A DNA stretch of 64,000 nt from Scyliorhinus canicula (taxonomy: Eukaryota): contig NC_052149.1 in assembly GCF_902713615.1 (NCBI RefSeq), positions 234,272,069-234,336,068 on the forward strand, in the 5' to 3' direction. Below the pieces are notes generated by a model, which searched no databases, had not been told where the DNA came from, and saw nothing but the letters and a program-made list of their open reading frames with translations. This document shows, in pieces, positions 32,330 through 51,700 of this stretch. The first letter of the stretch is position 1. Every line of letters begins with the position of its first letter. A program made the position numbers and the translations under genes.

Positions 32330-33050
32330 ACCTTTGTGGCGGTGTTATCTGGCTCCTTCACTTACAAGAAATGTCTCCAGCCGCAGCTCCCATTGGACTG
32401 CTTAACGGTTCTGGAGCTGTGGATGCATCCACGATACTGAGGGATTCATGGTTAGCACATTTAGCGGGTTGGTCACACCGCAGATAAAGAGTTACGAGGG
32501 AGATAGGAAATTGGACACGACCAGACAGAGGAAGAGTAGGGACGCATCGCAGGCATCCCCTGCAGTCATCTCCCTCTAAAACAGGTATACTGCTTTGGTT
32601 ACAGTTGAGGGAAATGACTCACCAGTGGAAGGCAGCAGTTCATGGCACCATGGCTGGCTCTGCTGCGCAGGAGGGCAGGAAAAAGTGTGGTAGAGCTATT
32701 GTGTTAAGGGATTTATTGTAAGGGGGAAGACAGGCGTTTCTGCAGACGCAAACGAGGCTTCAGGAAGGTATGTTGTCTCCCGGGTGCAAGGGTTCTGGAT
32801 ATCTCAGAGGGGCTGCAGGACATCCGAAAGGGGGTGGGTGAACAGGCAGCTTTCGTGGTGCATATTGGCAACAACAATATAGGTAAAAAAACGGGATGAG
32901 GTCCTACAAACTGAATTTAGGGAGTTAGGAAATAAGCGAAAAAGTAGGAGCCCTAAAGTAGTAATCTCAAGTTTGCCACCAGTGGCACGCGCTAGTCAGG
33001 GTAGGAATGACAGGATAGACAGGATGACTGCGTGGCTTGAGAGATGGTGC
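32330..33050 (+). mobile_element. CR1 ORF1 (SGNH esterase) fragment; homologues at ~45385-46110 and ~58165-58900
   Basis: VCCLPGARVLDVSERLQDILKGEGEQLAVVVHIGT in the third copy. Confidence 0.8.
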
Positions 33051-35421
33051 CCTGCTACCTTAAGTAACCGATGTACATGTACATCAAGGTCCCTTGATTC
33101 TGTATGCTTCCAGGGATCCTGCCTTTTATCGTTTGTCACTTGCCGTGTTACCCTGCCCAAGTGTTTCATCTGACACTTAACTGGATTGAATACTATTTGC
33201 TGCTGATCAGCCCATCTGAATTCTCGTCTGAACTAAATGTATCTTACTCCTATTTACCACTCCACCAATCTTTGTATAATCTACAACTTACTGATCAATC
33301 TTCCTACATTCATATCTGAAACATTTATGTAAACCACAAACAGAAAGGGCTCCAAAACTGAACACTCTTTTTAAATAAAGGATAGAATCAAACTCCCCCA
33401 AGGCCTTTGGCAATATTTCATTTTTTCCATACATTTCTAAAGGTATGTAATTGTGCTCCTTTCATCCCCTCTAACTGATTCAATTAGCACTGAATAGACA
33501 ATCCATTCGGAATAGGGGTAAAACTCTCACTAAGTTTGATTGTTTTTTTCAATTGTCCCTTTTGTGTCCATGTTAAATGGCTTTTACTTCTTCTCATGTG
33601 ATGGCACTATCTAAATGACACAATCTAAATGCTCCCCAGTAAATGAGTAACTGAAACGTAATTATTAAATATTTCTACCATCATTTGTGAGTTCATTTAC
33701 AAAAACACAGGGGCTGTAGGCATCTTTGACAGGCCCAGCATTTATTACTCATCCATAACTGGCCTTTAGCGACTTGTTAAGACATTTCAGAGTAACCCTC
33801 AGGGTCAAGCCATTGCAATGGCCCTGCAGCCAAACATAGGCCATAAGGGGAAGGAAGGCAGTGTCCTTGAAGATGGGAAACACAACGTTTTTATATTGTA
33901 ACCACTTAGTTTTATGACTACCATTATAGATAGTAACGTATTATTCCAGGTGTGATGAATTATTTGAATTTAAATTCACCTGCCAGAGTGAGATTATTAT
34001 CCTGCTAAAACAACAACAGTTCCTTTGTGCATCTGTCAGCAACCCTGTCCCCGTCTTCAGTTTTCTTCTGCTCTGTATCTTTCTGCCGTATACATTATTG
34101 ATTTGTATTTTCATTAATAATTTAAGTTTGCAATTATTTTTTGTTTTCTGTCTTTTTGACTAATTCTTCTTTTACCTGTTCATGTTTCTATTGACTGCTT
34201 TCTCCTGGTTTTCTGTGTACTTAGTGCATGCCTTTGTCTAGTGTTTCAGTTTTACTTGTATTTCATCCAGTCTATTATTTTAGTCTTTGTCTCACTTACA
34301 TATTTATTCATCATTTATTTACACCTTATTATTTTACCGTTGCTTTTGCTGGGATGGTCCTCGATTTTTGTTTTTCTCAACTGTTCAGATTAATTTTCGA
34401 TTACTACATCCAGAAATGGTCCCTCTCTTGTACAGGGTAAAAAGAGTCCTACGCATTCCCTTTTCTACTTTCTTGCCAATTTGTTTGGCTGTGATTAAAA
34501 TCGATCATACATAGATATCTATAACTTTTACGCATTCATTAAATTTACTTACCTATTTCACCCTCCGCCTCCCTTCAACGATTTGGAAGTCGGTTGAAAT
34601 GACCTTGTTTTACCAAACGACCCTTGGTCGACTGATCCACCTTCAGCTATGTTTGTAATACTGGTGCTTCGTTATTAATAAGCCATAAATAATTTTATCT
34701 TTTTTAAAGAAGGGTCATTTAGGGCACAGATCGATTTTATATTCAGTACCGACACTTAGGTGAGAATAAACCTACAGTATAAGTTGCCCTGACATATCGT
34801 TTGCTTGTTTTTAAAAAATATTTTACCAAATAAAGGACAATTTCAACGTGGCCAATCCACCTGCCAGACACATTTTTGGGTTGTGCGGGTGAGACCCAGG
34901 CAGACATGAGGCTGGGACCGAATCCAGGTTCGCAGCGGCGTGAGGCAGCAGTGTTAACCGCTGCGCCACCATGTCGCCGGACAACACCGCTTGTAATACT
35001 GCTTTCCTGCTTCATGGTTCATATGGAAATGATTTTAGTCAGGAGAGAACACGATGTATGAACGTATGAATGGTCCTGTGCATAATTACACCAAATAGTT
35101 TACAGTACAGAATGAACAGTCCCATTAGCAATGCATCCTGAAATATTATGGATGTGCTATGAAGGAAGATGAGATTTCATGTGGTCCTCATAAAAAAGAC
35201 CACATCAGAATTACATTCTAATTACATTCAAACATAAATGGTGCGACAAATATCACTTAAGGAGGTCCCATAGTTCTGCCCTCCACGGCCAAATGTAGAC
35301 TTCCCACTTGACTGTTAATACCAACTATATCAGGCAGAAACTAATTTAATTGCCTCGAAAAGTCAAACACTCGATCATATATATACTCGACGCAGAATAT
35401 AAAAGCTTATTCTGTGATCGA

Positions 35422-38400
35422 AGAACATAGAACATAGAACAGTACAGAACAGTACAGACCTGCCGGCCCACGATGTTTTGGCAAACATTTATCCTAATCT
35501 AAGATCAACCTAACTACACCCCTTCAATTTACTGCTGCCCATGTACCTGTCCACGAGCCTCTACCACCTCCCCTGGCAGTGCATTCCACACACCCACTAC
35601 TCTCGATGAAAAGAACCTACCTCTGACACCTCCTCTATAACTTCCTCCAATCACCTTCAAATTATGTCCCCTCATGACAGCCATTTCCGCATTGGGGAAA
35701 AGTCTCTGCCTGTTCACTCTATCCATGCCTCTCATCACCTTGAAAACCTCTATCATGTCACCTCTCTTCCTTCTTCGCTCCAGTGAGAAAACCCCTAGTG
35801 CCCTCATCCTTTGTTCATAAGACATGACCTCCAGTCCAGGCAGCATCCTGGTAAATCGCCTCTGCACCCTCTCCAAAGCATCCACATCCTTTCGATAATG
35901 AGGCGACTAGAACTGACACAATATTCCAAGTGTGGTCGAACCAGGGTTTTATGAAGCTGCAGCAAAACATCGCCACTCTTAAACTCAATCCCCCTATTAA
36001 TGAAAGCAAACACACTATTCGCCTTCTTTTATTTTTAATTTAGCTTACGCAATTCATTGTTTCCAATGAAGGGGCAGTTGCGCATAGCCAATCCACCTAC
36101 CATACACATTTTTAGATTGTGGGGGCGAAACCTACGCAAACACGGGGAGAATGTGCAAACTCCATGTGGACAGTAACCCAAAGCCGAAATCGAACCTGGG
36201 ACCTCAGCACCATGAGGCAGCAGTGCTATTCACTGCACCACTGTGCTGCCCTACCATATCCTTCTGAACAACCTTATCAACCTGGGTGGCAACTTTGAGG
36301 GATCTTTCTACGTGGACCCAAAGATCCCTCAGTTCCATCCACACTTCCAAGATTCCTGCCTTTAATCCTGTATTCAGCATTTTCTGATTGGAGGGCTGTG
36401 ACAGGTGGTGTTCCACAGGGATCAGTGCTGGGACCTTTGCTGTTCGTAGTATATATAAGTGATTTGGAGGAAAATGCAACTATTCTGATTAGTACGTTTG
36501 CAGATGACACAAAGGTTGGTTGAATTGCGGATAGGAATGAGGTCTGTCAGCGGATACAGCACGATTTAGACTGTTTGTAGACTTGGGTAGGGAGATGGCA
36601 GATGGAGTTTAATCCAGACAAATGTGAGGTAATTCATTTTGGAAGGTCTAATGAAGGTAGGGAATAGACAGTGAATGGTAGAACCATCAAGAGTATTGAA
36701 ACGCAGAGAGATCTAGATGTACAGGTGCACAGGTCACTGAAAGGGGCAACACAGGTGGAGAAGGCAGTCAAGAAGGCATACTGCATGCTTGCCTTCATTG
36801 GCCGGGGCATTGAATATAAGAATTGGCAAGTCATGTTGCAGCTGTATAGAACATTAGTTAGGCCATACTTGGTGTATCGTGTTCAATTCTGGTCGCCACA
36901 CTACCAGTAGAATGTAGAGGCTTTAGAGAGGGTGTATAAGTGATTTACCAGAATGTTGCCTGGTATGGAGGGCATTAACTATGAGGAGTGGTTGAATAAA
37001 TTTGGTTTGTTCTCACTGGAACACCGAAGATTGAGGGGCGACCGGATAGAGGTCTACAAAATAATGAGGGGCATAGACAGAATGGATAGTCAGAGGCTCT
37101 TTCCCACGGTAGAGGGGTCAATTACTAGGGGGGATAGGTTTAAGGTGCGAGGGGAAAGGTTGAGAGGAGATGTATGAGGCAAGTTTTTTACACAGAGGTT
37201 AGTGCGTGCCTGGAACTCGCTGCGGAGGAGATGGTGGAAGCAGGGACGATCGTGACATTTAAGAGGCATCTTGAGAAATACATGAATAAGATGGGAATAG
37301 AGGGATATGGACCCAGGAAGTGTAGAAGATTTTAGTTTAGGCGGACAGCATCATCGGCACAGGCTTGGGCGGCCAAAGGGCCTGTTCCTGTGCTGTACTT
37401 TTCCTTCTTCTTTGTTCTTTCTTCTATTCAAGTTTGACATTCCAAAATGAATCACTTCACTTTTATCTAGGTTGAACTCCATCTGCCACTTCTCAGCCCA
37501 GTTCTGCATCCTGTCATGTCCTGTTGTAACCTGCTCCAGCCCTCAACACTATCAACAACTCTACCAAGTTTCGTGTCACCGGCAAACTTACTAACCCATC
37601 CTTCCACTTCCTCATCCAAGTCATTTATAAAAACCAGAAAGTGCAGCGGTCCCAGAACAGATCCATGTGGGACATCACTGGCCAGCGACCTCCAGGCAGA
37701 ATATTTTCCATCCACTACCACTCGCTGTCTTCTTTCTGCCAGCCAATTCTGCATACAGACAGCCGGATCTCCCTGTGTCCTATGCCCCTAACTTTCTGAA
37801 CGAGCCTGCCATGAGGAACCTTCTCAAATGCCTTTCTGAAATCCATATACACCACATCCACTGCCCAACCTTCATAAATGTGTCTCGTCACATCCTCAAA
37901 GAATTCAATGAGGCTCGTGAGGCATGACCTGCCACTCAGAAAACCATGCTACCTTTAATCCAACTATGATTTTCTTAATAATGATAAATCCTATCTCTCA
38001 GACACCTTTCCAATATTTTGCTCACCAGAGACGTAAGACTGACTGTTTTGTTACTCTGGGGATTCCCCTTTTCCCTTTCTTGAACAGGGGAACAACATTT
38101 GCCTCCCTCCATTTATCCAGTACTACTCCAGTGCAGAGTGAGGACGCAAGGAAAATCGCCAATGGCGCGGCAATATCCTCCCTTGCTTCCCGTACTAACC
38201 TTTGGTATATCCCATCAGGCCCAGCGGACTTATCTATCCTGAGGCTTTTCAAAATTTCCAGCACATCCTCTTTCTTAATATCTAACTGTTCGAACCTATT
38301 AACCTGGTTCACAGTGTTCTCACGAGCAACAAGGTCACTCTTTCTCGTAAATTCTGTAGCAAAGTATTTATTTAGGGCCTCCCCTACCTCCTCAGACTTT

Positions 38401-39258
38401 AGGCACATAACTTCCCTCCTCTATCCCTGATCGTTCCTACGCTCACTCTGATCATCCTCATATGTCTCACATTAGTTCGAACGCATTGGGGTTTCCCTAA
38501 TCCTTCCCGCTAGGGCTTTTTCATGTCCCCTTTTAGCTCTCCTAATTCCATATTTGAATTTCTTCCTGGCTACCTTGTTACCCTCTGGAGCCGTACCAGA
38601 TTCTTGCTTCCTCAACCTTACATAAGCTTCCTTCTTCCTCTTGACTAGAAACTCCACTTCTCTTGTTATCCAAGGCTCCTTCCTTTCGTCATTTCCTCCT
38701 TGATTCAGTCGGGAAAAACTATCCAGCACTCGCAGCAAGTGCTCCTTAAACTATCCCACATTACTGTTGTGCTTGTCCCCGAGAACAACTGTTCCAAATC
38801 TATGCTCCTCAGCTTCTGTCTACCAGCAGTATAATTTCTCTTCCCCAATATAAATCCCTTCCCACATTGTCTGCTCCTATCCCTCTCCATTACTATGGTA
38901 AAAGCCAAGCAGTTATGATCACTGTCACCCAAATGCTCTCCAACCGAGATATCTGACACCTGGCCTGGTTCGCTGCCAAGCATGAAATCCAATATGGCCT
39001 CCACCCTACTCGGCCTATCTACATTTTGAATCAGGAATCCTTCCTGTGCACACCTGACAAAACCTGCTCCACCCAAACCATTTGCACCAATGAGGCTCCA
39101 GTCAATATTAGGGAAGGTGAGGACCCCCATGACAACAACTCTGTTACTTTTACGCCTTTCCGAGATCTGCCGCCAAATCTGTTCCTCCATCTCTCTGCTG
39201 CTATTGGTTGGTCGACAGAAAACTCCCAATAAAGTGACTGCTCCTGTCTTGTTTTCTA
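35422..39258 (-). mobile_element. Nested CR1 complex: - strand CR1 interrupted by a V-SINE (~36030-36250) and a + strand CR1 (~36380-37420)
   Basis: agaacatagaacatag tail; RT and endonuclease fragments on both strands. Confidence 0.88.
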
Positions 39259-39668
39259 AATGGAGTTAGAAAACATAACTCTATGCAGAAGAAATCAGCA
39301 GTTAGTGTTGTTGCAACAGTGATTGAGGAAAAGATATTAAAGTGAACGCATGTCGGAAACAATTACGTGTTGCAACAGAGAGTGATTGTATTGTTGGTAT
39401 TCAGAAGGAACATATTAAATGGACATTATTTTAAAATATGGGGTTGCATTATTATCTATCGGGTAGGAAACGTCAAAAGTTCAAGTGAACTCACATTTCA
39501 AAGCATGGACAATAACCTGAAAGAGAAATTCTATAAAATAGATTGAGCAGAGGCCTGGAAAATAGTGTGGATATTATAGTTGCACACCATTAAAAGTCTC
39601 ATTACGATGACTACCATTCCAGGAACAGCTCAGCTTTAAGGATTTCTGGTGTCGTTATTGACAGGATC

Positions 39669-39694
39669 CGCGTTGTGTCGCTGTCCACCAATAA
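39669..39694 (+). promoter_or_regulatory. CSE of G2
   Basis: Identical 26-mer, 256 bp upstream of ATG. Confidence 0.85.
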
Positions 39695-39924
39695 AAATCA
39701 GAAATGGGCGAGAGATCCATCTTTGAAGGGGAGCACAATCACAGAAAATCGGAATAGGTTGGCTGCGCTCAGATAGTGCGTCCACTTAACGAAGGCCAGA
39801 GCGAAATAGTTCGTAAATTCGACAGTACAAGATACTGGAAGGCTGATTAACAGCACGAAAGTGGTCAGAGTCACCGACTGCAAACCGATATTTGTGCTTT
39901 TGTGAGCTTTCCCGTCCGGTAACA

Positions 39925-42321
39925 ATGGCTGACTCACAAAGCAACAACGCCTGGAAATTCATGGTGATGGTTTCTGTTGTATTGATTTGTGCACTGGATG
40001 TGGTTTCTGCGCAGATTCGTTATTCGGTTCCCGAGGAAATGGAGCAAGGTGCTGTAATTGGTAATATTGCTGAAGATTTGGGGCTGAATATTGCAACATT
40101 GTCAGGTCAGAAAGGTCGGCTGGTCACTGACTACACAGAACGCTATTTGGAAGTAGATTTGGAAAATGGCTTGTTGTTTGCCAATGAGAGAATAGACAGG
40201 GACAAGCTTTGTGGACCAATCACCACATGTGTTCTCTCCTTCCAAATAGTGTTTGAAAATTCTCCAGAGATGTACCGCGGTGAAGTGGAGATTCTTGATA
40301 TAAATGATAATTCGCCCAGTTTCCCGGAGAGCGTCAATCTCTTACGAATGGCCGAAACCATGGCGCCAGGCTCCAGCTTTCCGCTAGAGAGCGCTCTCGA
40401 TCCAGACGTTGGAACAAATGCAGTCGCTGATTACAATATCAGCCCCAATGAGCACTTCGGTCTAAAAGTGGAGATTGCAGAGGACGGTACTAAAATTGTC
40501 GAGTTGTTATTGGAGAAACCGTTGGATCGCGAAGTGCACTCATCCTTTCAGCTGATGCTGACGGCCACTGACGGAGGGAGTCCTCCCAGATCTGGGACCG
40601 CTCGGATTCTCATCACTGTGCTGGACAGCAACGACAATGCCCCTGCGTTCGATAGCAAGACCTACAAGGTCAGCCTGATAGAAAACTCACCCAGAGGTAC
40701 CTTGGTGGTTTCAGTCCATGCCACTGATCCAGACGAAGGTTCGAACGCGGAGGTAACTTATTCTTTCAGAAACCGCGTTTCACGAAAAATGCAGGAACTG
40801 TTTAGTTTGGATCCTCGAACAGGAGAGATTCGTGTTCAGGGCATAATTGATTATGAAGGAGCAAGCACTTATTCACTTGATGTTCAAGCTGTAGACAATG
40901 GTTCACCGGCAATTGCAGGACATTCTAAAGTGTTTATTAACGTAATAGATGTCAATGATAACGCCCCTGGGATAAAAGTGACCATAGTGTCTAGCAGGGT
41001 ACCAGAGAATGCTGCCCCCGGGACTGTGACAGCACTCGTCAATGTAATCGACCGAGATTCTGGGAAAAATGGGCAGGTGTACTGCGAAATCCAGAACAGC
41101 GTTCCCTTTAAACTTCAAACATCTTCGAGTGGTCATTACAAAGTGATAACCAGTGACACGTTGGACCGTGAAACCACCCCTCTGTACAACATAGCTATTT
41201 TAGCCAGGGACTCGGGGTTACCTCCACTATCAACAAATAAAACAATTCAGATAACGGTTTCTGATATAAACGATAACGCCCCAAGGTTTGCTCGACCCAT
41301 GGACACAGTGTATGTGATGGAGAACAACGCTCCCGGTGCTTCCATTTTCGCAGTGACTGCTTTCGACCCTGATCAGGATCAGAACTCCTACGTCTCTTAC
41401 TCTTTCATAGACAACCTTATTCAAGAGTTAACATTGTCAAATTACCTCATTCTTAATTCGATGAACGGGACCATTTACGCGCTACGCTCTTTTGACTACG
41501 AGCGAGTTAAAAACTTCCAGATTCAAGTCCAAGCCCGAGACGCTGGCGTTCCCCCTCTGAGCAGCAGCGCAACATTGAATGTGATCATCCTGGATCAGAA
41601 TGACAACGCTCCGGTAATTGTTTCTCCTTCAGTACAGAGCGGATCAGCAGGAGTGGAAGTTGTGCCTCAGTCAGCGGGCCAGGGGTACTTGGCCACCAAG
41701 ATAATCGCAACTGATGCTGATTCCGGTCAGAATGCACGGCTCCTCTATCAGATGCTGAAAGCCACTGACCCCAGTTTGTTCATCGTGGGGCTTAATTCTG
41801 GAGAAATCAGAACAGCCCGAGGAATTTTGGAGCAGGATTCTACCACCCAGAGCCTTGTGATCTTGGTGAAGGATAATGGACAGCCGAGTCTTTCCAGCAC
41901 GGCTACAATCCACTTTTCAATCTCGGGCAATGTTACTGAAATCTTCTCCGAACGTAGCAACTTAGTGACAAATCCTGAATATGTCTCTGATACAAATCTT
42001 TATTTAATTGTCATTTTAGGCTCAACTTCCTTTATATTTCTTGTAACCATCATTTTGCTGATTGGCATCAAGTGTAAACAGGACAGAAATACTCCTGAAG
42101 ACTACAACTCCCCAAGTTGTTGCTCTGGACTGGACGATTCTAAAAATTCCTTTAATCTGAGACCCACACTGAAAGAATCTTTAAATTATACTGGAGCTGG
42201 AGAAAATATTCGCATCCCCGACGCGCATCATTATTCAGTTTGTCTGTCTCCTGAATCAGCAAAAAGCGATTTTCTGTTTTTGAAACCCTACACACCGCCC
42301 ATGTCTCAGGACCAATATTAA
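39925..42321 (+). CDS. Clustered protocadherin gene G2 (798 aa), probable G3/G1 chimera
   Basis: Same architecture as G1; true ATG at 39925 (track start 39892 is a TTG). Confidence 0.96.
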   Translation: MADSQSNNAWKFMVMVSVVLICALDVVSAQIRYSVPEEMEQGAVIGNIAEDLGLNIATLSGQKGRLVTDYTERYLEVDLENGLLFANERIDRDKLCGPITTCVLSFQIVFENSPEMYRGEVEILDINDNSPSFPESVNLLRMAETMAPGSSFPLESALDPDVGTNAVADYNISPNEHFGLKVEIAEDGTKIVELLLEKPLDREVHSSFQLMLTATDGGSPPRSGTARILITVLDSNDNAPAFDSKTYKVSLIENSPRGTLVVSVHATDPDEGSNAEVTYSFRNRVSRKMQELFSLDPRTGEIRVQGIIDYEGASTYSLDVQAVDNGSPAIAGHSKVFINVIDVNDNAPGIKVTIVSSRVPENAAPGTVTALVNVIDRDSGKNGQVYCEIQNSVPFKLQTSSSGHYKVITSDTLDRETTPLYNIAILARDSGLPPLSTNKTIQITVSDINDNAPRFARPMDTVYVMENNAPGASIFAVTAFDPDQDQNSYVSYSFIDNLIQELTLSNYLILNSMNGTIYALRSFDYERVKNFQIQVQARDAGVPPLSSSATLNVIILDQNDNAPVIVSPSVQSGSAGVEVVPQSAGQGYLATKIIATDADSGQNARLLYQMLKATDPSLFIVGLNSGEIRTARGILEQDSTTQSLVILVKDNGQPSLSSTATIHFSISGNVTEIFSERSNLVTNPEYVSDTNLYLIVILGSTSFIFLVTIILLIGIKCKQDRNTPEDYNSPSCCSGLDDSKNSFNLRPTLKESLNYTGAGENIRIPDAHHYSVCLSPESAKSDFLFLKPYTPPMSQDQY

Positions 42322-43011
42322 ATTGTAAAGGTTTCACAACACTGAAACAGGGTGAAATTCATGGCCATCTCTGTTAACTCCGTCCCTGCCGGTTGAATTA
42401 CTGAAACTATTTCCCGACCTTGAAGATCTCTATCATAGAATGAAAGGATCGTTCTTGTCTTGCAACTGTCAAGTGTTGTTCATCAAAAGATATGGTCTAA
42501 AATAAAAGGTTGCATGATACTATCGCGATGTGTCTGAAACTGTCGTCTATTAACTAGGAAGGGAACCCGACAGACGAGTCATTCTCCGAGCTACATAATC
42601 AGGATTGTTTTTAAGGTCCGCTCCAGAATTGATCACGAGACATTGATACCTGAATGTATTCGGATAATTTCCATTCACGGTTTACAATTTGAAATCCCAG
42701 CTTAAGCAATTGGACGGACCTTAACCCCTCATAACGTCGAAAGGGTTAATGGGCGAGCTTTACATTTCATAGCTGGCTCAATCGATTCTTGTGCTGACTT
42801 CCACACAGATGCTCGACTGAAGGTATTTCATAGTGACGCGCGGAATTGGAAATTGGCGCAAAACTACTTTCAAAGTGCCGCATATTAATCTGATAAAGTA
42901 TAATACATTTTCGGACCCTGCATGCACGCATGCAATAGCCGAGAGAAGTAAGCGCCGAAAAATACTGTTTGATCTGCATGATTCACTCCTTTTCTATAAG
43001 TGCGCTAATAT

Positions 43012-44403
43012 AAGAACATAAGAACTAGGAGCAGGAGTCGGCCCTCTGGCCCCTCGAGCCTGCTCCGCCATTCAATGAGATCATGGCTGATCTTTTGTGG
43101 ACTCATCTCCACTTTCCGAACCGAACACCATAACCCTTAATCCCTTCTATCTTTAATGAAGGAGCCTCAAGTGCTTCACTTGGCAAGGAATTCCATAGAT
43201 TCACAACCCTTTGGGTGAAGAAGTTCCTCCTAAACCCAGTCCTAAATCTACTTCCCCTGAAATTGAGGCTATTCCCCCGAGTTCTGCTTTCACCCGCCAG
43301 TGGAAACAACCTGCCTATATCTATCCTATCTATTCCCTTCATAATATTAAATGTTTCTAAGAGACCCCCCCTCAACCTTCTAAATTCCAACGAGTGCAGT
43401 GCCAGTCTACTCAACCTGTCCTCATAATCCAACCCCTTCAGCTCTGGGATTAACCTAGTGAATCTCCTCTGCACACCCTCCAGTGCCAGTACGTCCTTTC
43501 TCAAGTAAGGAGACCAAAATTGAACACAATACTCCAGGTGTAGCCTCACCTTATACAATTGCAACATAACGTCCCTAGTCTTAAACTCCATCCCTCTCGC
43601 AATGAAGGACAAAATTCCATTTGCCTTCTTAATCACCTGTTGCACCTGTAAACCAACTTTCTGTGACTCATGCACTAGCACACCCAGGTTTCTCTGCACA
43701 GCAGCATACTTTAATATTTTATCGTTTAAATAATAATCCCGTTTGCTGTTCTTCCAAACAAAATAGATAACCTCACATTTGTCAACATTGTGTTCCATCT
43801 GCCAGACCCTAGCCCATTCACTTAACCAATCCAAATCCCTCTGCAGACTTACAGTATCCTCTGCACCTTTTGCTTTACCACTCATTTTAGCATGATCTGC
43901 AAACTTGGACACATTGCCCTTGGTCCCCAACTCCAAATAATCTATTTAAATTGTGAACAATTGTGGGCCCAACACGGATCCCTGAGGGACACAACTAGCT
44001 ACTGATTGCCAACCAGAGAAAAACCCATTAAACCCCACTCTTTGCTTTCTATTAATTAAACAACCCTCTATCCATGCTACTACTTTACCCTGAATGCCAT
44101 GCATCTTTATCTTATGCGGCAACCTTTTGTGTGCCACCTTGTCAAAGGCTTTCTGGAAATCCAGATATACCACATCCATTGGCTCCCCGTTATCTACTGC
44201 ACTGGTAATGTCCTCAAAAAATTCCACTAAATTAGTTAGGCACGACCTGCCCTTTATGAACCCATGCTGCGTCTGCCCAATGGGACAATTTCTATCCAGA
44301 TGCCTCGCTATTTCTTCCGTGATGATTGATTCCAGCATCTTCCCTACTACCGAAGTTAAGCTCACTGGCCTATAATTTCCTGCTCTCTGCCTACCTCCTT
44401 TTT
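43012..44403 (-). mobile_element. Relatively young 5'-truncated CR1 (RT)
   Basis: QHGFIKGRSCLTNL, YLDFQKAFDKV, VPQGSVLGP, SKFADH; absent at the homologous site ~31360. Confidence 0.93.
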
Positions 44404-47400
44404 AAAAATATCGTCTGCACTTAAAGAATTTCATAATTTACAACGAATGTACAACACAAAAAACTTGCTTCTGGTCCAGTAGGTCCATATCAGTTTTCCC
44501 CGCCTTCAGTTTTCAAACTTAATCTGGAATACCTTTTCATAAGTACTGCTGGGATGTCCTTTGGTTTAGAACTGGCATTATCCTGATCCTAATTTTTAAA
44601 CAAAAATCATTTCCGGGATGTGGGCGTCGCTGGTTAGGCCAGCAGTTATTGTCCCTCCCTAGTTGCCCTTCAGAAGTTGGTGGTGAGTTGCATTCTTGAA
44701 TCACTGCAGTCCTTCTGTAGTATTATTATTATTATTCAGATGTAGGTACACTCACAGTGCTGTTGGAGGGGGAGTTCTAGGATTTTCGCACAGTGACAGC
44801 GAAGGAACGGCGATATATTTCCAAGAGTGATTTCCGTGAGTGACTTTGAGGGGAACCTCCTGATGGTAGTGTTCCCAGGCATCTTCTGCTCTTGTCCTTC
44901 TAGATGGTAGTGGTCATGGGTTTGGAAGGTGCTGTCTCAGGAACCTTGGTGAGTTACTGCAGTGCATCTTACACGGCTGCCACTGTTCGTCGGTGGTGGA
45001 GGGTTTGGATGTTTGTGGAAGGGGGAGCAATATAGCGTGTGCTTTGGCCTGGATGGTGTTGAGCTTCTTGAGTGTCGAGGTCTACGACAGGCCCTCAGCA
45101 AAGAGAAACAGACTTACCCCTTACAAAAGATGATTTTAAAAAGAATCTGAGCTATTTTTGTCAGAACAAAGCTCAGGGTTGAGGCTTTGCTGTCCATCCC
45201 GCGATTTTCTACCTAGAATAATGAGTTGGACCAAAACCACGCTAATTGGACAAAGCAGCGTATCTATGGTTCAGAGATTATGTAAATGTTTACAATTCAC
45301 TGGTCAGAACGCACGATTCATAACTTGTAACTGAGCTCTACTTGTCCTTGACAGTTGTTGGGACATTCATCTTTTTATTAGCTTTGTGGTGGTGTTATCT
45401 GGCTCCTTCACTTACAAGAAATGTCCCCAGCCGCAGCTCCCATTAGACTGCTTAACGGCTCTGGAGCTGTGGATGCATCCACGATACTGAGGGATTCGTG
45501 GTTAGCACATTTAGTGAGTTGGTCACACCGCAGATAAAGAGTTATGAGGGAGATACGAAATTGGACACTACCAGACAGAGGAAGAGTAAGAAAGCGTCGC
45601 TGGTGTTCCCTGCAGTCATCTCCCTCTAAAACAGGTATACTGCTTTGGTTACAGTTGAGGGAAATGACTCACCAGTGGAAGGCAGCAGTAGCTACGTTCA
45701 TGGCACCGTGGCTGTCTCTGCTGCCCAGGAGGGCAGGAAAAAGTGTGGTAGAGCTATCGTGATAGGGGATTCATTGTAAGGGGGTATACAGGCGTTTCTG
45801 CAGACGCAAACGAGGCTCCAGGAAGGTATGTAGTCTCCCGGGTGCAAGGGTTCTGGATATCTCAGAGGGGCTGCAGGACATCCGAAAGTGGGAGGATGAA
45901 CAGGCAGCTTTCGTTATGCATATTGGCAACAACAATATAGGTAAAAAAAACGGGATGATGTCCTACAAACTGAATTTAGGGAGTTAGGAAATAAACTAAA
46001 AAGTAGGAGCTCAAAAGTAGTAATCTCAGGATTGCCACAAGTGACACGTGCTAGTTACAGTAGGAATGACAGGTTAGATAGGATGACTGTGCGGATTGAG
46101 GAATGATGTCCTGCCACCTTAAGTAACCGATGTATATCAAGGTCCCTCTGATTCTCTGTGCTTCCGGGGGTCCTGCCTTTTATCGTTTGTCACTTGCCTT
46201 GTTACCCTGCCGAAGTGCTTCATCTGACACTTAACTGGATTGAATACTATTTGCCACTGATCAGCCCATCTGAATTCTCGTCTAAACTAAATGTATCTTA
46301 CTCCTATTTACCACTCCGCCAATGTGTGTATCATCTACGAACTTACTGATTAATCCTCCTGCATTCATATCTGAAACATTTATGTAAACCACAAACACAA
46401 AGGGCTCCAAAACTGAACACTCTTTTTAAATAAAGGATAAAATCAACCTCCCCCAAGTCCTTTGGCAATATTTCATTTATTCCATACATTTCTAAAGGTA
46501 TGTAATTGTACTCCTTCCATCCCCTCTAACTGATTAAACTGGCACTGAATACCAAATCCAATCGGAATACGGGTAAAACTCTCACTAAGTTTGATTGTTT
46601 TTTCAATTGTCCCTTTTGTGTCCATGTTAAATGGCTTTTATTTCTTCTCATGTGATGGCACTATCTAAATGACACAATGTCAACGCTCCCTAGTAAATGA
46701 GTAACTGAAACAAAATTATTAAATATTTCGACCATCATTTGTGATTTCATTTACAAAACCACAGGGGCTGTAGGCATCTTTGACAGGCCCAGCATTTATT
46801 ACTCATCCATAACTGGCCTTTAGCGACTTGTTAAGACATTTCAGAGTTCCCCTCAGAGTCAAGCCATTGCAATGGCTCTGCAGCCAAACATAGGCCATAA
46901 GAGGAAGGAAGGCAGTGTCCTTCATGAAGTGAAACACGACGTTTTTATATTGTAAACTCTTAGTTTTCTGACTAACATTATAGATAGTAACGTATTATTC
47001 CAGGTGTGATGAATTATTTGAATTTAAATTCACCTGCCAGAGTGAGATTATTATCCTGGTAAAACATCAACAGTTCCTTTGTGCATCTGTCAGCAACCCT
47101 GCCCCGGTCTTCTGTTTTCTTCTGCTCTGTATCTTTCTGTCAGATACATCATTTATTTGTATGTTCATGGATAATTTAAATTTGCAGTTATTTTTTGTTT
47201 TCAGTCATTTTTGACTAATTCTTTTTTTTACCTGTTCATGTTTCTGTTGACTGTTTTCTCCTGGTTTTCTGTGTACTTAGTGCATGCCTTTGTCTATTGT
47301 TTCAGTTTTACTTGTATTTCATCCAGTCTATTATTTTAGTCTTTGTCTCACTTATATATTTATTCATCCTTTATTTACACCTTATTATTTTATCGTTGTT

Positions 47401-47443
47401 TTTGCTGGGATGGTACTCGATTTTTGTTTTTCTTAACTATTCT

Positions 47444-47670
47444 TTTTTAAAAATAAATTTAGAGTACCCAATTCAATTTTCCAATTAAGGGGCAATTTAG
47501 CATGGCCAATCCACCTAGCCTACGCATCTTTGGGTTGTGGGGGCGAAACCCACGCAAACACGGGGAGAATGTGGAAAATTCACACGGACAGTTAGCCATA
47601 GCCGGGATCGAACCTCTGACCTCAGCGTCGTGAGGCAGCAGGGCTAACCCACTGCGCCACCTTGCTGCCC
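47444..47670 (-). mobile_element. Short V-SINE with A-rich tail and 17-bp TSD
   Basis: TSD tttttcttaactattct at 47427-47443 and 47671-47687; empty site at ~34372. Confidence 0.88.
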
Positions 47671-48705
47671 TTTTTCTTAACTATTCTGATTAATTGTCTA
47701 TTACTCCATCCGGAAATAGTCCCTCTCTTGTACAGGGTAAGAAGTGTCCTAAGCATTCCCTTTTCTACTTTCTTGCCAATTTGTTTGGCTGTGATTAAAA
47801 TCGATCATACATTGATCTCTATAACTTTCCCGCATTCATTAAATTTACTGACCTATTTCACCCTCCGCCTCCCTTCCACGATTTGGAAGTCGGTTTAAAC
47901 GACTTTGTTTTACCATTCGATGCATGGTCGAATGATCCACCTTCAGCTATGATTCTAATATTGGTGCTTCGTTAGTAATAAGCCATGAATAATTTTATCT
48001 TTTTTAAAGAAGGGTCATTTAGGGCACAGATCGATTTTATATTCAGTACCGACAATTAGGTGAGAATAAACCTACAGTACAAGTTGCCCTGACAATATCG
48101 TTTGCTTGTTTTTAAAAAAATATTTTCCCAAATAAAGGACAATTTTAATGTGGCCAATGCATCTACCCGACACATTTTTGGGTTGTGGGGTGAGAACCCG
48201 CAGACACGGGGCCGGGACCGAATCCAGGTTCTGGCGGCACAGTGACTGTGCCACTGTGCCGCCAGACGACATCGCTTGTAATACTGCTTTCCTGCTTCAT
48301 GGTTCATATGGAAATGATTTTAATCAGGACAGAACACTAGGTATGAACGTATGAATGCTCTTGTGCATAATTACACCAAATATTTTGCAGTACAGAATGA
48401 GCAGTCCCATTAGCAATGCATTCTGAAATATTATGGATGTGTTGTGAAGGAAGATGAGATTCCATGCTGTCTGCAGAAAAGTGACCGCATCAGAATTACA
48501 TTCTGATTACATTCAAACACAAATGGTTGGACAAATACCACTTAAGGAGGTCCCATAGTTCTGCCCTCCACGGCCAAATTGGGACTCACCACATGACTGT
48601 TACTACCAATTATATAAAGCAGAAACTAATTATTGGCCTCTAAAAATCAAACACTCGATCACATATATACTCGGCGCAGAGTATAAAAGCTTATTCTGTG
48701 ATCGA

Positions 48706-51700
48706 AAACATAGCACATAGAACGGTACAGCACAGTACAGACCCATTGGTCCACGATGTTGTGGCGACCATTTATCCTACTCTAAGATCAACCTAATCTA
48801 CACCCCTTCAATTTACTGCTGCCTATGTACCTGTCCACCAGCCTCTACCACCTCCCCTGGCAGTGCATTCCACACACCCACCACTCTCGGTGAAAATAAC
48901 CTACCTCTGACATCTCCCCTCTCGCTTCCTCCAATCACCTTCAAATTATGTCCCCTCGTGATAGCCATTTCCGCCTTTGGGAAAAGTCTCTGGCTGTCCA
49001 CTCTATCCATGCCTCTCATCACCTTGAACACCTCTATCATGTCACCTCTCTTCCTTCTTCGCTCCAGTGAGAAAACCCCTAGCTCCCTCAACCTTTATTC
49101 ATAAGACATGACCTCCAGTCCAGGCACCATCCTGGTAAATCGCCTCTGCACCCTCTCCAAAGCATCCACATCCTTTCTATGATGAGGCGACCAGAACTGA
49201 CACAATATTCCAAGTGTGGTCGAACTAGGGTTTTATGAAGCTGCAGCAAAACTCGCCACTCTTAAACTCCAATCCCCCTGTTAATGAACACGAACACACT
49301 ATTCGCCTTCCTTTGTTTATAATTTAGCTTACCCAATTCATTGTTTCCAATTAAGGGGCAGTTGAGCATGGCCAATCCACCTACCATGCACATTTTTAGA
49401 TTGTGGGGGCGAAACCTACTCAAACACGGGGAGAATGTGCAAACTCCACCTGGGCATTAACCCAGAGCTGTGATCAAACCTGGGACGTCAGCGCCGTGAG
49501 GCAGCAGTGCTATTCACTGTGTCACCGTGCTGCCCTACCATATACCTTCTGAACAACCTGAACAACCTGGGTGGCAACTTTGAGTGATCTTTCGACGTAG
49601 AACCCAAGATCCCTCAGTTCCTTCCACACTTCCAAGATTCCTGCCTTTAATCCTGTGTTCAGCATTTTCTGATTGGAGGGCTGTGACATGTGGTGTTCCA
49701 CAGGGATCAGTGCTGGAACCTTTGCTGTTCGCAGTATATATAAATGATTTGGAGGAAAATGTAAATGGTCTGATTAGTACGTTTGCAGACGACACAAGGG
49801 TGGGAGAATTGCGGATAGTGATGAGGACTGTCAGAGGATACAGCAGGATTTAGATTGTTTGGAGACTTGTGCAGAGACATAGCAGATGGAGTTTAATCCA
49901 GTCAGTCTAATCCGCGGCAGCACGGTAGCATAGTGGTTAGCATAAATGCTTCACAGCTCCAGGGTCCCCAGTTCGAATCCCGGCTTGGGTCACTGTCTGT
50001 GTGGAGTCTGCACGTTCTCCCCGTGTGTGCGTGGGTTTCCTCCGGGTGCTCTGGTTTCCTCCCACAGTCCAAAGATGTGCAGGTTAGGTGAATTGGCCAG
50101 GCTAAATTGCCCTCAGGGTCCAAATTGCCCTTAGTGTTAGGTGGGGTTACTGGGTTATGGGGATAGGGTGGAGGTATGGGCTTGGGTAGGGTGCTCATTC
50201 CAAGAGCTGGTGCAGACTCGATGGGCCGAATGGCCTCCTTCTGCACTGTAAATTCTATGAAATGTGAGGTAATGCATTTTGGAAAGTCTAATGAAGGTAG
50301 GGAATATACAGTGAATGGTAGAACCCTCAAGAGTATTGAAACTCAGAGAGATATAGATGTACAGGTGCACAGGTTACTGAAAGGTGCAATACAGGTGGAG
50401 AAGGTAGTCAAGAAGGCATACCGCGTGCTTGAATTCATTAGCTGGGGCATTGAGTATAAGAATTGGTAAGTCATGGTGCAGCTGTATAGAACTTTAGTTA
50501 GGCCACACTTGGAGTATAGTGTTCAATTCTGGTCGCCACACTACCAGAAGAATGTGGAGGCTTTAGAGAGGGTTTAGAAGAGATTTACCAAGATGTTGCC
50601 TGGTATGGAGCGCATTAACTATGAGGAGCGGTTGAATAAATTCGGTTTGTTCTCACTGGAACGACGGAGGTTGAGGGGCGACCTGATTGAGGTCTAAAAA
50701 ATTATGAGGGGCATAGACCGAATGGATAGTCAGAGGCTCCTTACCACGGTAGAGTGGTCAATTACCAGGGGGCATAGGCTTAAGGTGCGAGGGGCAAGGT
50801 TGAGAGGAGATGTACGAGGCACGTTTTTTACACAGAGGGTAATGAGTGCCTGGAACTCGCTGCCGGAGGAGGTGGTGGAAGCAGGGACGATCGTGACATT
50901 TAAGAGGCATTTTGATAAATACATGAATAGGATGGGAATAGACATAGAACAGTACAGCACAGAACAGGCCCTTCGGCCCTCGATGTTGTGCCGAGCAACG
51001 ATCACCCTACCCAAACCCACGTATCCACCCTATACCGCAACCCAACAACCCCCCCTTAACCTCACCCTTTTTAGGACACTACGGGCAATTTAGCATCTCC
51101 AATCCACCTAACCCGCACATCTTTGGACTGTGGGAGGAAACCGGAGCACCCGGAGGAAACCCACGCACACACGGGGAGGACGTGCAGACTCCGCACAGAC
51201 AGTGACCCAGCTGGGAACCGAACCTGGGACCCTGGAGCTGTGAAGCATTTATGCTAACCACCATGCTATCGTGCTGCTGTACAGAGGGATACGGACCCAG
51301 GAAGTGCAGAAGGTTTTAGTTTAGGCGGACAGCATGGTCGGCACATGTTTGATGGCCGAAGGTCCTCTTCCTGTGCTGTACTTTTTCTTGTTCTTTGTTC
51401 TTTGTTCTATTCAAGTTCGACATTCCAAAATGAATCACTTCACATTTATCGAGGTTGAACTCCATCTACCACTTCTCAGCCCAGCTCTGCATCCTGTCAA
51501 TATCCTGCTGTAACCTGCAACAGCCCTCAATACTATCTACAACTCTACCAACCTTTGTGTCATCGGGAAACTTCCTAACCCATCCTTCCACTTCCACATC
51601 CAAGTCATTTATAAAAACCACAAAGTGCACAGGTCCCAGAACAGATCCCTGTGGGACATCACTGGCCAGCGACCTCCAGGCAGAATATAATCCATCCACT

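What the first reader, a model, noticed from the sequence alone, without database searches (positions are those of the whole stretch)
39600..42400. G2 is a chimeric protocadherin born by unequal crossing-over, recombining EC1 and EC4 specificity surfaces
Seen: G2 groups with G3 at the 5' end (14-nt promoter deletion, MVSVVL, VTDYTERYLEVD). It groups with G1 from late EC3 onward (QAVDNG, KVFIN, GIKVTIVSSRVP, QVYCEIQNSVPF, SISGN, DDSKNSFNLRP, 3' flank). The G1-G2 and G2-G3 spacers are duplicates sharing a 3.8-kb nested CR1 complex that is absent from the G3-G4 spacer. This is the product expected from one crossover between misaligned G3 and G1, with a breakpoint in EC2-EC3 (~40450-40890). Known: cPcdh homophilic specificity uses antiparallel EC1:EC4 and EC2:EC3 contacts. 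Inference: one event created a new gene with a novel EC1/EC4 pairing, i.e. domain shuffling as a source of new recognition codes.
Basis: partly seen in the sequence, partly recalled or inferred. Interest (0 to 1): 0.75.

Follow-up and report, generated by a model that had tools for sequence, protein, structure and literature searches.

The report
Hybrid protocadherin gene from unequal crossover
One of four neighbouring catshark protocadherin genes is a hybrid: its promoter and first adhesion domain come from the gene downstream and the rest from the gene upstream, which is the textbook product of a misaligned crossover that duplicated a ~12-kb unit, so it is real and datable but mechanistically ordinary.

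Summary
G2 (CDS 39925-42321) groups with G3 from 39259 to 40236 (5' flank, signal peptide, EC1). It groups with G1 from about 40661 through the 3' flank. MaxChi gives p<=2e-4, and AU tests reject the alternative topologies on both sides. The G1-G2 and G2-G3 spacers are duplicates at 7-8% divergence. Both carry a 3.84-kb CR1-like LINE block that the G3-G4 spacer lacks.

G2 has the 5' end of the downstream gene and the 3' end of the upstream gene, as the duplication product of one unequal crossover should (anti-Lepore type). Both halves and the spacer are about equally diverged. The sister species Scyliorhinus torazame is annotated with only one G1/G2-type gene, 10.8 kb upstream of its G3-type gene. 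G1 and G2 are co-orthologous to it (support 96).

- The switch lies between 40237 and 40660, most likely at the EC1/EC2 border, not 40450-40890.
- The middle zone is patchy, and short gene conversion also occurs in the array.
- The claim that the EC1/EC4 re-pairing created a new recognition code is untested and the literature disagrees. Amino-acid change since the duplication concentrates in EC2-EC3.

This is a new instance of a known mechanism, of moderate interest.

The parts
28275..30671 (+). G1, upstream parent: single-exon protocadherin gene (798 aa plus stop)
   Evidence: protein identical to P0123
39925..42321 (+). G2, the hybrid gene (798 aa from the first ATG): Cadherin_2 domain, five Cadherin domains and Cadherin_C_2
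   Evidence: intact ORF, pairwise dN/dS 0.2-0.3 against its parents
54118..56514 (+). G3, downstream parent (798 aa plus stop)
   Evidence: identical to P0004
61969..64000 (+). G4, the next paralog, cut by the window end; used as outgroup (full protein is P0005)
39259..40236 (+). G3-derived part of the G2 unit: 5' flank, promoter, signal peptide and most of EC1
   Evidence: 22 of 24 quartet-informative sites support (G2,G3|G1,G4). AU test rejects the other topologies, p about 1e-4. Three indels are shared by G2 and G3, including the 14-nt deletion. Derived residues S17, T68 and E72 are shared only by G2 and G3.
39669..39694 (+). Promoter block identical in all four genes: a CGCT-containing element followed by a CCAAT box. 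It looks like the protocadherin conserved sequence element (from memory, not scored against a consensus).
   Evidence: alignment; sequence
39724..39725 (+). Site of the 14-nt deletion shared by G2 and G3 (G1 at 28060 and G4 at 61753 keep the 14 nt)
40237..40660 (+). Switch zone (end of EC1 through EC2). The crossover lies here, most likely at 40237-40351. The signal is patchy.
   Evidence: ML breakpoint 40182/40187 with support interval 40156-40758. The last G3-type informative site is 40236 and the first G1-lineage diagnostic residue is A143 at 40351. The quartet tree is unresolved here.
40661..43011 (+). G1-derived part of the G2 unit: EC3 to the C-terminus plus the 3' flank
   Evidence: 13 of 14 informative sites at 40935-41159 support (G1,G2|G3,G4). 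AU test p=0.013 and 0.002. All 10 pre-speciation diagnostic residues from 289 to 767 are G1-type. 3' flank divergence is 6.9% to G1 against 19.7% to G3.
30672..39258 (.). Spacer copy 1 (G1 to G2), duplicate of the G2-G3 spacer
   Evidence: 7.5-8.4% divergence from copy 2
42322..53397 (.). Spacer copy 2 (G2 to G3). Same sequence plus later insertions at 43012-44405, 47443-47670, about 49905-50259, about 50943-51282 and 51933-52074.
35416..39258 (-). 3.84-kb CR1-like LINE block in spacer copy 1, absent from the G3-G4 spacer
   Evidence: APE endonuclease ORF at 38705-39229 on the minus strand. A (TTCTATG)n / (TGTACTGTTC)2 tail sits at 35422-35458, exactly at the boundary. Boundaries.
48700..53397 (-). 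The same LINE block in spacer copy 2, enlarged by later insertions
   Evidence: Endonuclease ORF at 52937-53368 on the minus strand, E=2e-9; alignment
30464..30475 (+). 12-bp patch in G1 identical to G3 56307-56318 and differing at 6 sites from G2 42114-42125: a short gene conversion into G1 after the duplication
   Evidence: The S. torazame ortholog has the G2 amino-acid state, SPSCCSG.

Best explanation
G2 is the junction gene of a tandem duplication made by one unequal (non-allelic homologous) crossover.

The ancestral array was G1, then a spacer carrying a CR1-like insert, then G3, then G4. Misaligned chromatids paired the G3 unit with the G1 unit and exchanged inside the coding exon, most likely near the EC1/EC2 border (40237-40351, possibly as far as 40660).

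The duplication product carries G1, a hybrid gene and G3. The hybrid has the G3 promoter, signal peptide and EC1, joined to G1's EC2-EC6, transmembrane segment and tail. The 9-kb spacer is present twice. This is the anti-Lepore configuration.

The event happened in the S. canicula lineage after its split from S. torazame. It is about 7-8% neutral divergence old.

Afterwards copy 2 gained LINE and SINE-like insertions, and short gene-conversion tracts touched the genes. G1 and G2 accumulated amino-acid replacements mainly in EC2 and EC3.

Shown: the mosaic, its orientation, the duplicated spacers, similar ages, and the outgroup annotation. Inferred: that the exchange was a single crossover at birth rather than duplication plus conversion, and that G2 is an expressed homophilic recognition protein (by homology only).
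For: 1. Opposite, significant topologies on the two sides. MaxChi chi2=111.8 with permutation p<=2e-4. Informative sites split 22/24 on the left and 13/14 on the right.

2. Only G2 has a young relationship on both sides. G1-G3 is old everywhere outside the homogenised exon parts.

3. The orientation is the one a duplication product must have: 5' end of the downstream gene, 3' end of the upstream gene.

4. The young block is continuous and of one age:
- G1-G2 3' flank 6.9%
- spacer 7.5% and 8.4%
- G2-G3 distal 5' flank 7.9%
The neighbouring old comparisons are 15.0% and 19.7%. Synonymous divergence agrees: dS is 0.095 for G2-G3 in EC1 and 0.089 for G1-G2 over codons 280-798.

5. Outgroup. In the S. 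torazame chromosome assembly one G1/G2-type gene (P0121) lies 10,821 bp upstream of the G3-type gene (P0122), and the next gene follows after 8,190 bp. No further gene is called within 10 kb upstream. Each of the two S. torazame assemblies contributes only one sequence to that 90% cluster.

6. Protein tree for residues 246-798 gives ((G1,G2),P0121) with support 96. The tree for residues 1-129 gives (G2,G3) with support 89. Differences over residues 280-798 are 24 for G1-G2, 40 for G1-P0121 and 42 for G2-P0121. S17, T68 and E72 are derived states found only in G2 and G3.

7. The one clear conversion tract seen is only 12-20 bp, much shorter than the blocks of 1 kb or more at issue.

8. It is not an assembly artefact. 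Contigs from four runs of four studies match G2-specific sequence exactly. Examples are X7 42267-42922 with 0 differences and X1 40540-41359 with 1 difference, spanning the run of G1-unique sites at 40670-40750 (where G2 matches G3 and G4) and G1-like sites.
Against: - The middle zone is not a clean switch. Informative sites at 40346-40661 read 3,3,1,2,3,2,3,1, and G2 shares R141 and D169 only with G4.
- The proximal promoter (39600-39924) is 2.8% diverged between G2 and G3, against about 8% for the rest of the block. This could mean a later G2-G3 exchange rather than constraint.
- EC1 is homogenised among all paralogs at synonymous sites. G1-G3 dS is 0.061, lower than G2-G3 at 0.095. Within the coding part, the G3 affinity therefore rests on 5 informative sites, 4 of them nonsynonymous.
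- In EC1 the two S. torazame genes cluster with each other (support 63), which hints at concerted evolution of this domain.
- No S. torazame DNA could be read, so the outgroup evidence is annotation and protein sequence only.
- No single long molecule spanning G1 to G3 was seen; the contigs are at most 820 bp.
Confidence: 0.7

Rival explanations
1. Duplication first, mosaic later. An unequal crossover outside the coding region (for example at the unit boundary or in the promoter) first made G2 a complete copy of G1's coding sequence. One or more later gene conversions from G3, and perhaps G4, then overwrote its promoter, signal peptide and EC1.
For: - Gene conversion is active here: a 12-bp G1/G3 patch and a possible G4-like patch at residues 141-171.
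- The proximal promoter is only 2.8% diverged between G2 and G3, against about 8% for the spacer.
- EC1 shows low dS among all paralogs and species-wise clustering in S. torazame.
- Gene conversion among clustered protocadherin paralogs is documented in teleosts and mammals (PMC2764143).
Against: - The distal 5' flank (39259-39599) is already G3-like at the spacer's own divergence (7.9%) and old relative to G1 (15%). The original exchange therefore lay 3' of 39599.
- dS of EC1 between G2 and G3 (0.095) is not younger than the duplication.
- A tract of about 1 kb is needed, whereas the documented tract here is 12-20 bp.
- It needs at least one more event than the crossover model.
- Elephant shark protocadherins are reported to show little conversion (PMC2764143).
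Confidence: 0.2
2. The three-gene array G1-G2-G3 is ancestral. S. torazame lost one unit by the reciprocal deletion crossover, and G1 and G2 look like sisters only because of concerted evolution.
For: - A deletion crossover between G1 and G2 would also leave one gene with a G1-type 5' end and a G1/G2-type 3' end, which is what P0121 looks like.
- G2 and P0121 share SPSCCSG.
Against: - ((G1,G2),P0121) has support 96 over 553 residues.
- G1-P0121 and G2-P0121 distances are equal (40 and 42) and larger than G1-G2 (24).
- S17, T68 and E72 of G2 and G3 are absent from both S. torazame genes.
- The spacers are uniformly 7-8% diverged over 8 kb of non-coding DNA, where concerted evolution is not expected.
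- SPSCCSG is explained by the micro-conversion into G1.
Confidence: 0.06
3. Assembly artefact: G2 and its spacer are a falsely duplicated or chimerically joined haplotype.
For: Tandem paralogs are hard to assemble. Two reference bases (40426 G and 41016 C) are read differently in all four runs laid.
Against: - The copies differ by 7-8% and by five insertions of 140-1,390 bp, far beyond allelic variation.
- G2-specific sequence is found at 99-100% identity in contigs of four runs from four studies. One 820-bp contig spans the run of G1-unique sites at 40670-40750 (where G2 matches G3 and G4) and the G1-like sites in the same molecule.
Confidence: 0.02

Closest known systems
Haemoglobin anti-Lepore hybrid genes (and Lepore, red/green opsin hybrids): junction genes of unequal crossover in tandem arrays
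   Same: The geometry is the same. The duplication product carries the upstream gene, a hybrid with the 5' end of the downstream gene and the 3' end of the upstream gene, and then the downstream gene, with the intergenic spacer duplicated. (Textbook knowledge; the geometry was tested here.)
   Different: Here the product appears common or fixed (present in four sampled runs). It is about 7-8% neutral divergence old and under purifying selection, and it sits in a recognition-molecule array, not a disease allele.
Lineage-specific tandem duplication in clustered protocadherin arrays
   Same: Tandem single-exon genes, each with its own promoter. Duplications in these clusters are attributed to unequal crossover (PMC4151104), and lineage-specific duplication and degeneration drive cluster evolution (PMC2764143).
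   Different: The library searches found no paper that resolves an intragenic crossover point with both parents preserved. Here the junction can be placed to within a few hundred bases, and a sister species shows the pre-duplication state.
Gene conversion among protocadherin paralogs (teleosts, mammals)
   Same: Mosaic similarity along the exon and unequal dS between ectodomains. G1-G3 dS ranges from 0.06 in EC1 to 0.34 in EC4. There is also one clear 12-bp tract.
   Different: The classical pattern homogenises EC5-EC6 and the cytoplasmic part and leaves EC1-EC3 diverse (PMC2764143). Here EC1 and EC6 are the most similar, and EC4 and the tail the most diverged. The large blocks continue into kilobases of duplicated non-coding spacer, which conversion does not explain.
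Elephant shark Pcdh-epsilon genes and vertebrate delta-2 protocadherin-10
   Same: The named Callorhinchus relatives include protocadherin epsilon14 and epsilon17 at 58-59% identity. The best solved structure is protocadherin-10 EC1-6 (6vg4, E=6e-200), ahead of gamma-B4. The domain set is six cadherin repeats plus Cadherin_C_2.
   Different: The catshark genes end in their own stop codon, with no sign of splicing to constant exons. Subcluster assignment was not tested.

Membership tests
Hybrid junction gene of an unequal-crossover tandem duplication (anti-Lepore type) | Tandem repeat whose period equals the spacing of two older paralogs, with no non-homologous junction | tested here: met
   Units are 27606-39258, 39259-53397 and 53398-61290. 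All three genes are intact. Copy 1 and copy 2 are collinear apart from later insertions.
Hybrid junction gene of an unequal-crossover tandem duplication (anti-Lepore type) | The middle gene has the 5' end of the downstream parent and the 3' end of the upstream parent, with significantly different trees on the two sides | tested here: met
Hybrid junction gene of an unequal-crossover tandem duplication (anti-Lepore type) | A single switch point | tested here: inconclusive
   One-, two- and three-breakpoint models have equal BIC (397.2, 396.5, 397.1). The zone 40237-40660 is patchy.
Hybrid junction gene of an unequal-crossover tandem duplication (anti-Lepore type) | Both halves of the hybrid and the duplicated spacer have the same age | tested here: met
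   Non-coding divergence is 6.9-8.4% throughout. dS is 0.095 in the 5' part (EC1) and 0.089 in the 3' part. The exception is the proximal promoter at 2.8%.
Hybrid junction gene of an unequal-crossover tandem duplication (anti-Lepore type) | The pre-duplication two-gene state exists in an outgroup, and the duplicates are co-orthologous to the single outgroup gene | tested here: met
   S. torazame has P0121, then P0122 after 10,821 bp, then the next gene after 8,190 bp. ((G1,G2),P0121) has support 96. This rests on annotation and protein only, because no outgroup DNA was available.
Clustered protocadherin | Signal peptide, six extracellular cadherin repeats, a transmembrane segment and a short cytoplasmic tail, all encoded by one large exon | tested here: met
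   Pfam finds Cadherin_2 (30-112), five Cadherin domains and Cadherin_C_2 (691-787). Five DxNDNxP linkers are present. The ORF is uninterrupted.
Clustered protocadherin | Tandem array of such exons, each with its own promoter carrying a conserved sequence element | tested here: inconclusive
   The array is shown. A 26-nt block with a CGCT core and a CCAAT box is identical in all four promoters. It was not scored against the published element, and promoter activity was not tested.
Clustered protocadherin | Splicing of variable exons to shared constant exons (alpha and gamma type), or none (beta type) | not tested
   The ORFs end in stop codons. No transcript structure was obtained. Run X5 covers only about 39671-42804, but its RNA nature is a guess.
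Clustered protocadherin | Homophilic antiparallel EC1-EC4 trans dimer | not testable with these tools
   Inferred from homology to solved protocadherins. The one complex prediction gave no verdict.

The most novel reading that the evidence does not exclude
The crossover itself, in one step, created a new self-recognition specificity by pairing a G3-type EC1 with a G1-type EC4. Under this reading, domain re-pairing by unequal crossover is a regular source of new protocadherin codes, and the EC2-EC3 substitutions only refine the specificity afterwards.
Probability: 0.2. Interest if true: 0.65.

Novelty: new member of a known kind. Interest (0 to 1): 0.45.

Why it matters
Protocadherin arrays are thought to grow by unequal crossover, but the junctions are normally erased by time and conversion. 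Here both parents, the hybrid, the duplicated spacer and a sister species with the pre-duplication arrangement are all available. The history of one new isoform can therefore be read step by step. G2 got a different promoter and EC1 at birth. G1 and G2 then diverged mostly in EC2-EC3 (12 and 10 derived residues), against 2 in EC4.

This gives a natural experiment for a disputed question: whether EC1/EC4 identity contributes to recognition specificity, or whether only EC2/EC3 does. It also asks whether a newborn isoform with a borrowed promoter is chosen independently of its parent. The mechanism itself is textbook, so the value is as a clean test case, not as a new principle.

Tried and rejected
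- S. torazame DNA could not be fetched. Four look-ups returned gene tables only, because the sample file was too large. The cross-species test therefore rests on proteins and annotation.
- Logan contigs are short here (at most 820 bp), so no single molecule spans promoter to EC4.
- A homodimer prediction of G2 EC1-EC4 gave 'no answer' (score 0.00, controls not run). It is not evidence either way.
- Key older papers were not held: Noonan 2004 on conversion, Noonan 2003 on the human 16.7-kb deletion, and Yu 2008 on elephant shark. The Xenopus cluster paper has nothing on crossover. Library searches found no description of catshark protocadherin clusters or of a mapped intragenic crossover.
- G1 or G3 as the recombinant was rejected, because neither has a young relative on both sides.
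- The run of G1-unique sites at 40670-40750 (where G2 matches G3 and G4) was considered as evidence for a late breakpoint near 40755. It was rejected because these are five G1-specific replacements. S. torazame P0121, G3 and G4 all carry the G2 state.
- Pfam found nothing in most ORFs of the LINE block. Its nested composition was not resolved.
- Findings look-ups by words gave nothing relevant.


Full report
WHAT IS THERE

The window carries a tandem array of single-exon protocadherin genes on the + strand:
- G1 28275-30671
- G2 39925-42321
- G3 54118-56514
- G4 from 61969 to the window end
- a pseudogene fragment at 9828-11528

The window has no N. Each gene encodes a 798-aa protein with a Cadherin_2 domain, five Cadherin domains and Cadherin_C_2. 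The proteins of the window lie on a 244-Mb contig. The closest named relatives are from Scyliorhinus canicula and S. torazame. Named Callorhinchus relatives include protocadherin epsilon14 and epsilon17 at 58-59% identity. The best solved structure is protocadherin-10 EC1-6 (6vg4), ahead of gamma-B4.

Self-comparison defines three repeat units: 27606-39258, 39259-53397 and 53398-61290.

CHECK OF THE OBSERVATION

The 14-nt deletion shared by G2 and G3 lies between 39724 and 39725.

Sliding-window identity changes sides along the unit:
- 5' flank: G2-G3 0.905-0.973 against G1-G2 0.815-0.880.
- 40788-41188: G1-G2 0.96-0.98 against G2-G3 0.86-0.925.
- 3' flank: G1-G2 0.92-0.94 against G2-G3 0.76-0.83.

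Sites informative for the four-gene quartet also switch. From 39348 to 40236, 22 of 24 support (G2,G3|G1,G4). From 40935 to 41159, 13 of 14 support (G1,G2|G3,G4).

The statistics agree:
- The maximum chi-square for the G1/G2/G3 triplet is 111.8, never reached in 5000 permutations.
- AU tests reject both alternative topologies on the left (p about 1e-4) and on the right (p=0.013 and 0.002). The middle (40237-40757) is unresolved.

The two spacers are collinear duplicates. Both contain a 3.84-kb block (35416-39258 and 48700-53397) that the G3-G4 spacer lacks. The block carries APE-endonuclease remnants on the minus strand. It ends exactly at the boundary in a short-repeat tail of the TTCTATG type, which fits a CR1-like LINE.

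WHICH GENE IS THE RECOMBINANT, AND HOW

Only G2 has a young relative on both sides. Divergences fall into two classes.

Young block:
- G1-G2 3' flank: 6.9%
- spacer: 7.5% and 8.4%
- G2-G3 distal 5' flank: 7.9%

Old comparisons next to it:
- G1-G2 5' flank: 15.0%
- G2-G3 3' flank: 19.7%

Synonymous divergence agrees. dS is 0.095 for G2-G3 in EC1 and 0.07-0.13 for G1-G2 in EC2-EC6.

G2 has the 5' end of the downstream gene and the 3' end of the upstream gene. The duplication product of one unequal crossover between a G3 unit and a G1 unit must have exactly this arrangement (anti-Lepore type). The opposite arrangement would belong to the deletion product.

A continuous young block of about 11.65 kb runs from inside G1 to the homologous point inside G2. 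It is repeated from G2 to G3. This is what a single non-allelic homologous exchange predicts.

OUTGROUP

The S. torazame chromosome assembly has one G1/G2-type gene (P0121, XP_072368870). The G3-type gene (P0122, XP_072368871) starts 10,821 bp after P0121's start, and another 798-aa gene starts 8,190 bp after that. No gene is called within 10 kb upstream.

The spacings match S. canicula G1-to-G2 (11,650 bp) and G3-to-G4 (7,851 bp). Each of the two S. torazame assemblies contributes one sequence to that 90% cluster.

Protein trees and distances date the event:
- For residues 246-798 the tree gives ((G1,G2),P0121) with support 96.
- For residues 1-129 it gives (G2,G3) with support 89.
- Over residues 280-798, G1-G2 differ at 24 sites, G1-P0121 at 40 and G2-P0121 at 42.
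- S17, T68 and E72 are derived states found only in G2 and G3. D78 is shared with the S. torazame G3 ortholog.

Both halves of G2 therefore coalesce with their parents after the species split. It rests on annotation and protein sequence only, because no S. torazame DNA could be fetched.

WHERE THE SWITCH IS

The evidence points earlier.
- The ML single breakpoint is 40182/40187, with a support interval of 40156-40758. Models with one to three breakpoints have equal BIC.
- The last G3-type informative site is 40236.
- At residue 143 (nt 40351), G3 and its S. torazame ortholog share the MGEFIAP motif. G2 instead has the MAETMAP state of the G1/G2 lineage.
- From residue 289 to residue 767, all ten pre-speciation diagnostic residues are G1-type.
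- Synonymous divergence puts EC2 and EC3 with G1: 0.095 and 0.070, against 0.158 and 0.137 to G3.
- The run of sites at 40670-40750 where G2 matches G3 is not G3 ancestry. These are five G1-specific replacements, and S. torazame P0121 and G4 carry the G2 state.

The likeliest exchange point is therefore 40237-40351, at the EC1/EC2 border. The domain limits come from the DxNDNxP linkers. Anything up to 40660 cannot be excluded.

At protein level G2 has a G3-type EC1 (6 of the 8 G1/G3 differences) and a G1-type EC4 (16 of 16).

WHAT DOES NOT FIT A SINGLE CLEAN EVENT

1. Informative sites between 40346 and 40661 are mixed, and G2 shares R141 and D169 only with G4. This may be a short G4-like patch, but the evidence is weak.
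2. The proximal promoter (39600-39924) is 2.8% diverged between G2 and G3, against about 8% elsewhere in the block. This is either constraint on the promoter and 5' UTR or a later exchange.
3. A 12-bp patch (G1 30464-30475, identical to G3 56307-56318) differs at six sites from G2. Here G2 has the S. torazame amino-acid state. It is a clear micro-conversion into G1 after the duplication.
4. Three sites in EC6 group G2 with G3.
5. EC1 is similar among all paralogs at synonymous sites (0.06-0.13). The two S. torazame genes cluster together in EC1. This domain may be subject to homogenisation.

For these reasons I give 0.2 to the rival of duplication followed by conversion. Against that rival:
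- The distal 5' flank is already G3-like at the spacer's own age, so the exchange lay 3' of 39599.
- EC1 dS is not younger than the duplication.
- The one clear conversion tract is 12-20 bp, not 1 kb.

NOT AN ARTEFACT

The copies differ by 7-8% and by five insertions in copy 2. One of these is a 1.39-kb CR1-like fragment with a reverse-transcriptase ORF at 43012-44405.

Contigs from four runs of four studies match G2-specific sequence:
- X7 42267-42922, with no difference.
- X1 40540-41359, with one difference. It carries the run of G1-unique sites at 40670-40750 (where G2 matches G3 and G4) and the G1-like sites together.

Reference bases 40426 and 41016 are read differently in all four runs. 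Run X5, guessed to be RNA, covers only about 39671-42804. This is compatible with transcription of G2 but does not show it.

FUNCTION

By homology G2 is a homophilic recognition protein using the antiparallel EC1-EC4 dimer. This is inferred. One complex prediction gave no verdict.

Whether the EC1/EC4 re-pairing changed specificity is open. Goodman et al. report that domain-shuffled mutants show specificity depends on the identity of EC1 and EC4 (PMC5106212). Nicoludis et al. conclude that EC1/EC4 gives non-selective affinity, that EC2/EC3 gives specificity, and that chimeras with EC1 and EC4 from different paralogs still aggregate (PMC5001838).

Polarising G1/G2 differences with S. torazame shows where the two copies diverged after birth. 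Counts are derived residues in G1 plus G2:
- EC2: 6+7
- EC3: 6+3
- EC4: 0+2
- EC5: 2+3
- EC6: 3+4

Most of these are states seen in no other paralog. Nonsynonymous against synonymous codon differences are 23:10 in EC2-EC3 and 20:25 from EC4 onward (Fisher p=0.038). The data therefore fit point substitution in EC2-EC3 as the main route to a distinct isoform. The EC1 swap is a possible but unproven contributor.

COMPARISON WITH WHAT IS KNOWN, AND VERDICT

Tandem duplication by unequal crossover is the accepted way protocadherin clusters grow (PMC4151104; PMC2764143). Hybrid junction genes are textbook (Lepore and anti-Lepore haemoglobins, opsins). I found no paper that maps such a junction in a protocadherin array or describes the catshark cluster, but the library is incomplete.

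This is a new, well-preserved member of a known kind. Confidence is 0.7 in the single intragenic crossover and 0.2 in duplication plus later conversion. Interest is 0.45, mainly as a natural test case for how new recognition isoforms arise and for the disputed role of EC1/EC4.

Noticed in passing
window 30464-30475 (G1), 42114-42125 (G2), 56307-56318 (G3): A 12-bp patch where G1 is identical to G3 and differs from G2 at 6 sites, flanked on both sides by sites where G1 and G2 agree against G3. S. torazame P0121 has the G2 amino-acid state (SPSCCSG). This is a short gene conversion into G1 after the duplication.
   Followed up: yes
window 40346-40475 (G2 residues 141-184): G2 shares R141 and D169, and nucleotides 40346, 40430, 40475 and 40626, only with G4. 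This may be a short G4-like conversion patch in the first half of EC2, or parallel change. The evidence is too thin to decide.
   Followed up: partly
window 39600-39924: The proximal promoter and 5' UTR of G2 and G3 differ by only 2.8%, while the rest of the duplicated block differs by 7-8%. Older paralog pairs are not comparably conserved here. This is either constraint or a later G2-G3 exchange.
   Followed up: partly
window 40426 and 41016: Reference G at 40426 and C at 41016 are read as A and T in contigs of all four runs laid. They are rare alleles of the sequenced animal or consensus errors. With A at 40426, residue 168 becomes T, the G1-lineage state.
   Followed up: no
window 43012-44405: A 1.39-kb insertion specific to the G2 unit: a 5'-truncated CR1-like LINE on the minus strand with a reverse-transcriptase ORF (43946-44365, RVT_1 E=5e-16). 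Contig word depth there is 50,000-270,000, so the family is extremely abundant.
   Followed up: partly
window 49917-50259 and 50943-51277 (also 8615-8954 and 2261-2585): Two copies of a repeat of about 340 bp, in opposite orientation, inserted into spacer copy 2 only (81% alike; 87% to the copy at 8615-8954). It looks SINE-like and inserted after the duplication.
   Followed up: no
window 53710-53762: A 53-bp AT-rich insertion in the G3 5' flank, absent from G1, G2 and G4.
   Followed up: no
window 39669-39694 and the homologous sites upstream of G1, G3 and G4: A 26-nt block with a CGCT core followed by CCAAT, identical in all four promoters, about 230-255 nt upstream of the ATG. It is likely the protocadherin conserved sequence element.
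   Followed up: partly
G1-G4 coding regions, by ectodomain: Synonymous divergence between the older paralogs is very uneven. G1-G3 dS is 0.06 in EC1, 0.17 in EC2, 0.12 in EC3, 0.34 in EC4, 0.15 in EC5, 0.09 in EC6 and 0.24 in the tail. EC1 and EC6 look homogenised, and EC4 and the tail do not. This is not the classical EC5-EC6 pattern.
   Followed up: partly
window 10956-11528 (pseudogene fragment): The EC5 part of the upstream pseudogene is 93.3% identical to G1 over 10956-11472 but 89-90% identical to G2-G4 over 10956-11528. Its EC1-EC3 part is only about 70% alike.
   Followed up: no
proteins P0007, P0009 (same species, outside the window) and S. torazame P0008, P0011, P0013: Other paralogs of the array share EC2-EC6 with G1-G4 at about 80% identity but have a quite different signal peptide and EC1 (branch length 0.6 in the N-terminal tree). 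EC1 swapping may therefore be recurrent in this cluster.
   Followed up: partly
G2 protein against solved structures: The best solved relative is the non-clustered delta-2 protocadherin-10 (6vg4, 669 bits) rather than alpha, beta or gamma isoforms (574 bits or less), although the genes sit in a tandem cluster.
   Followed up: no
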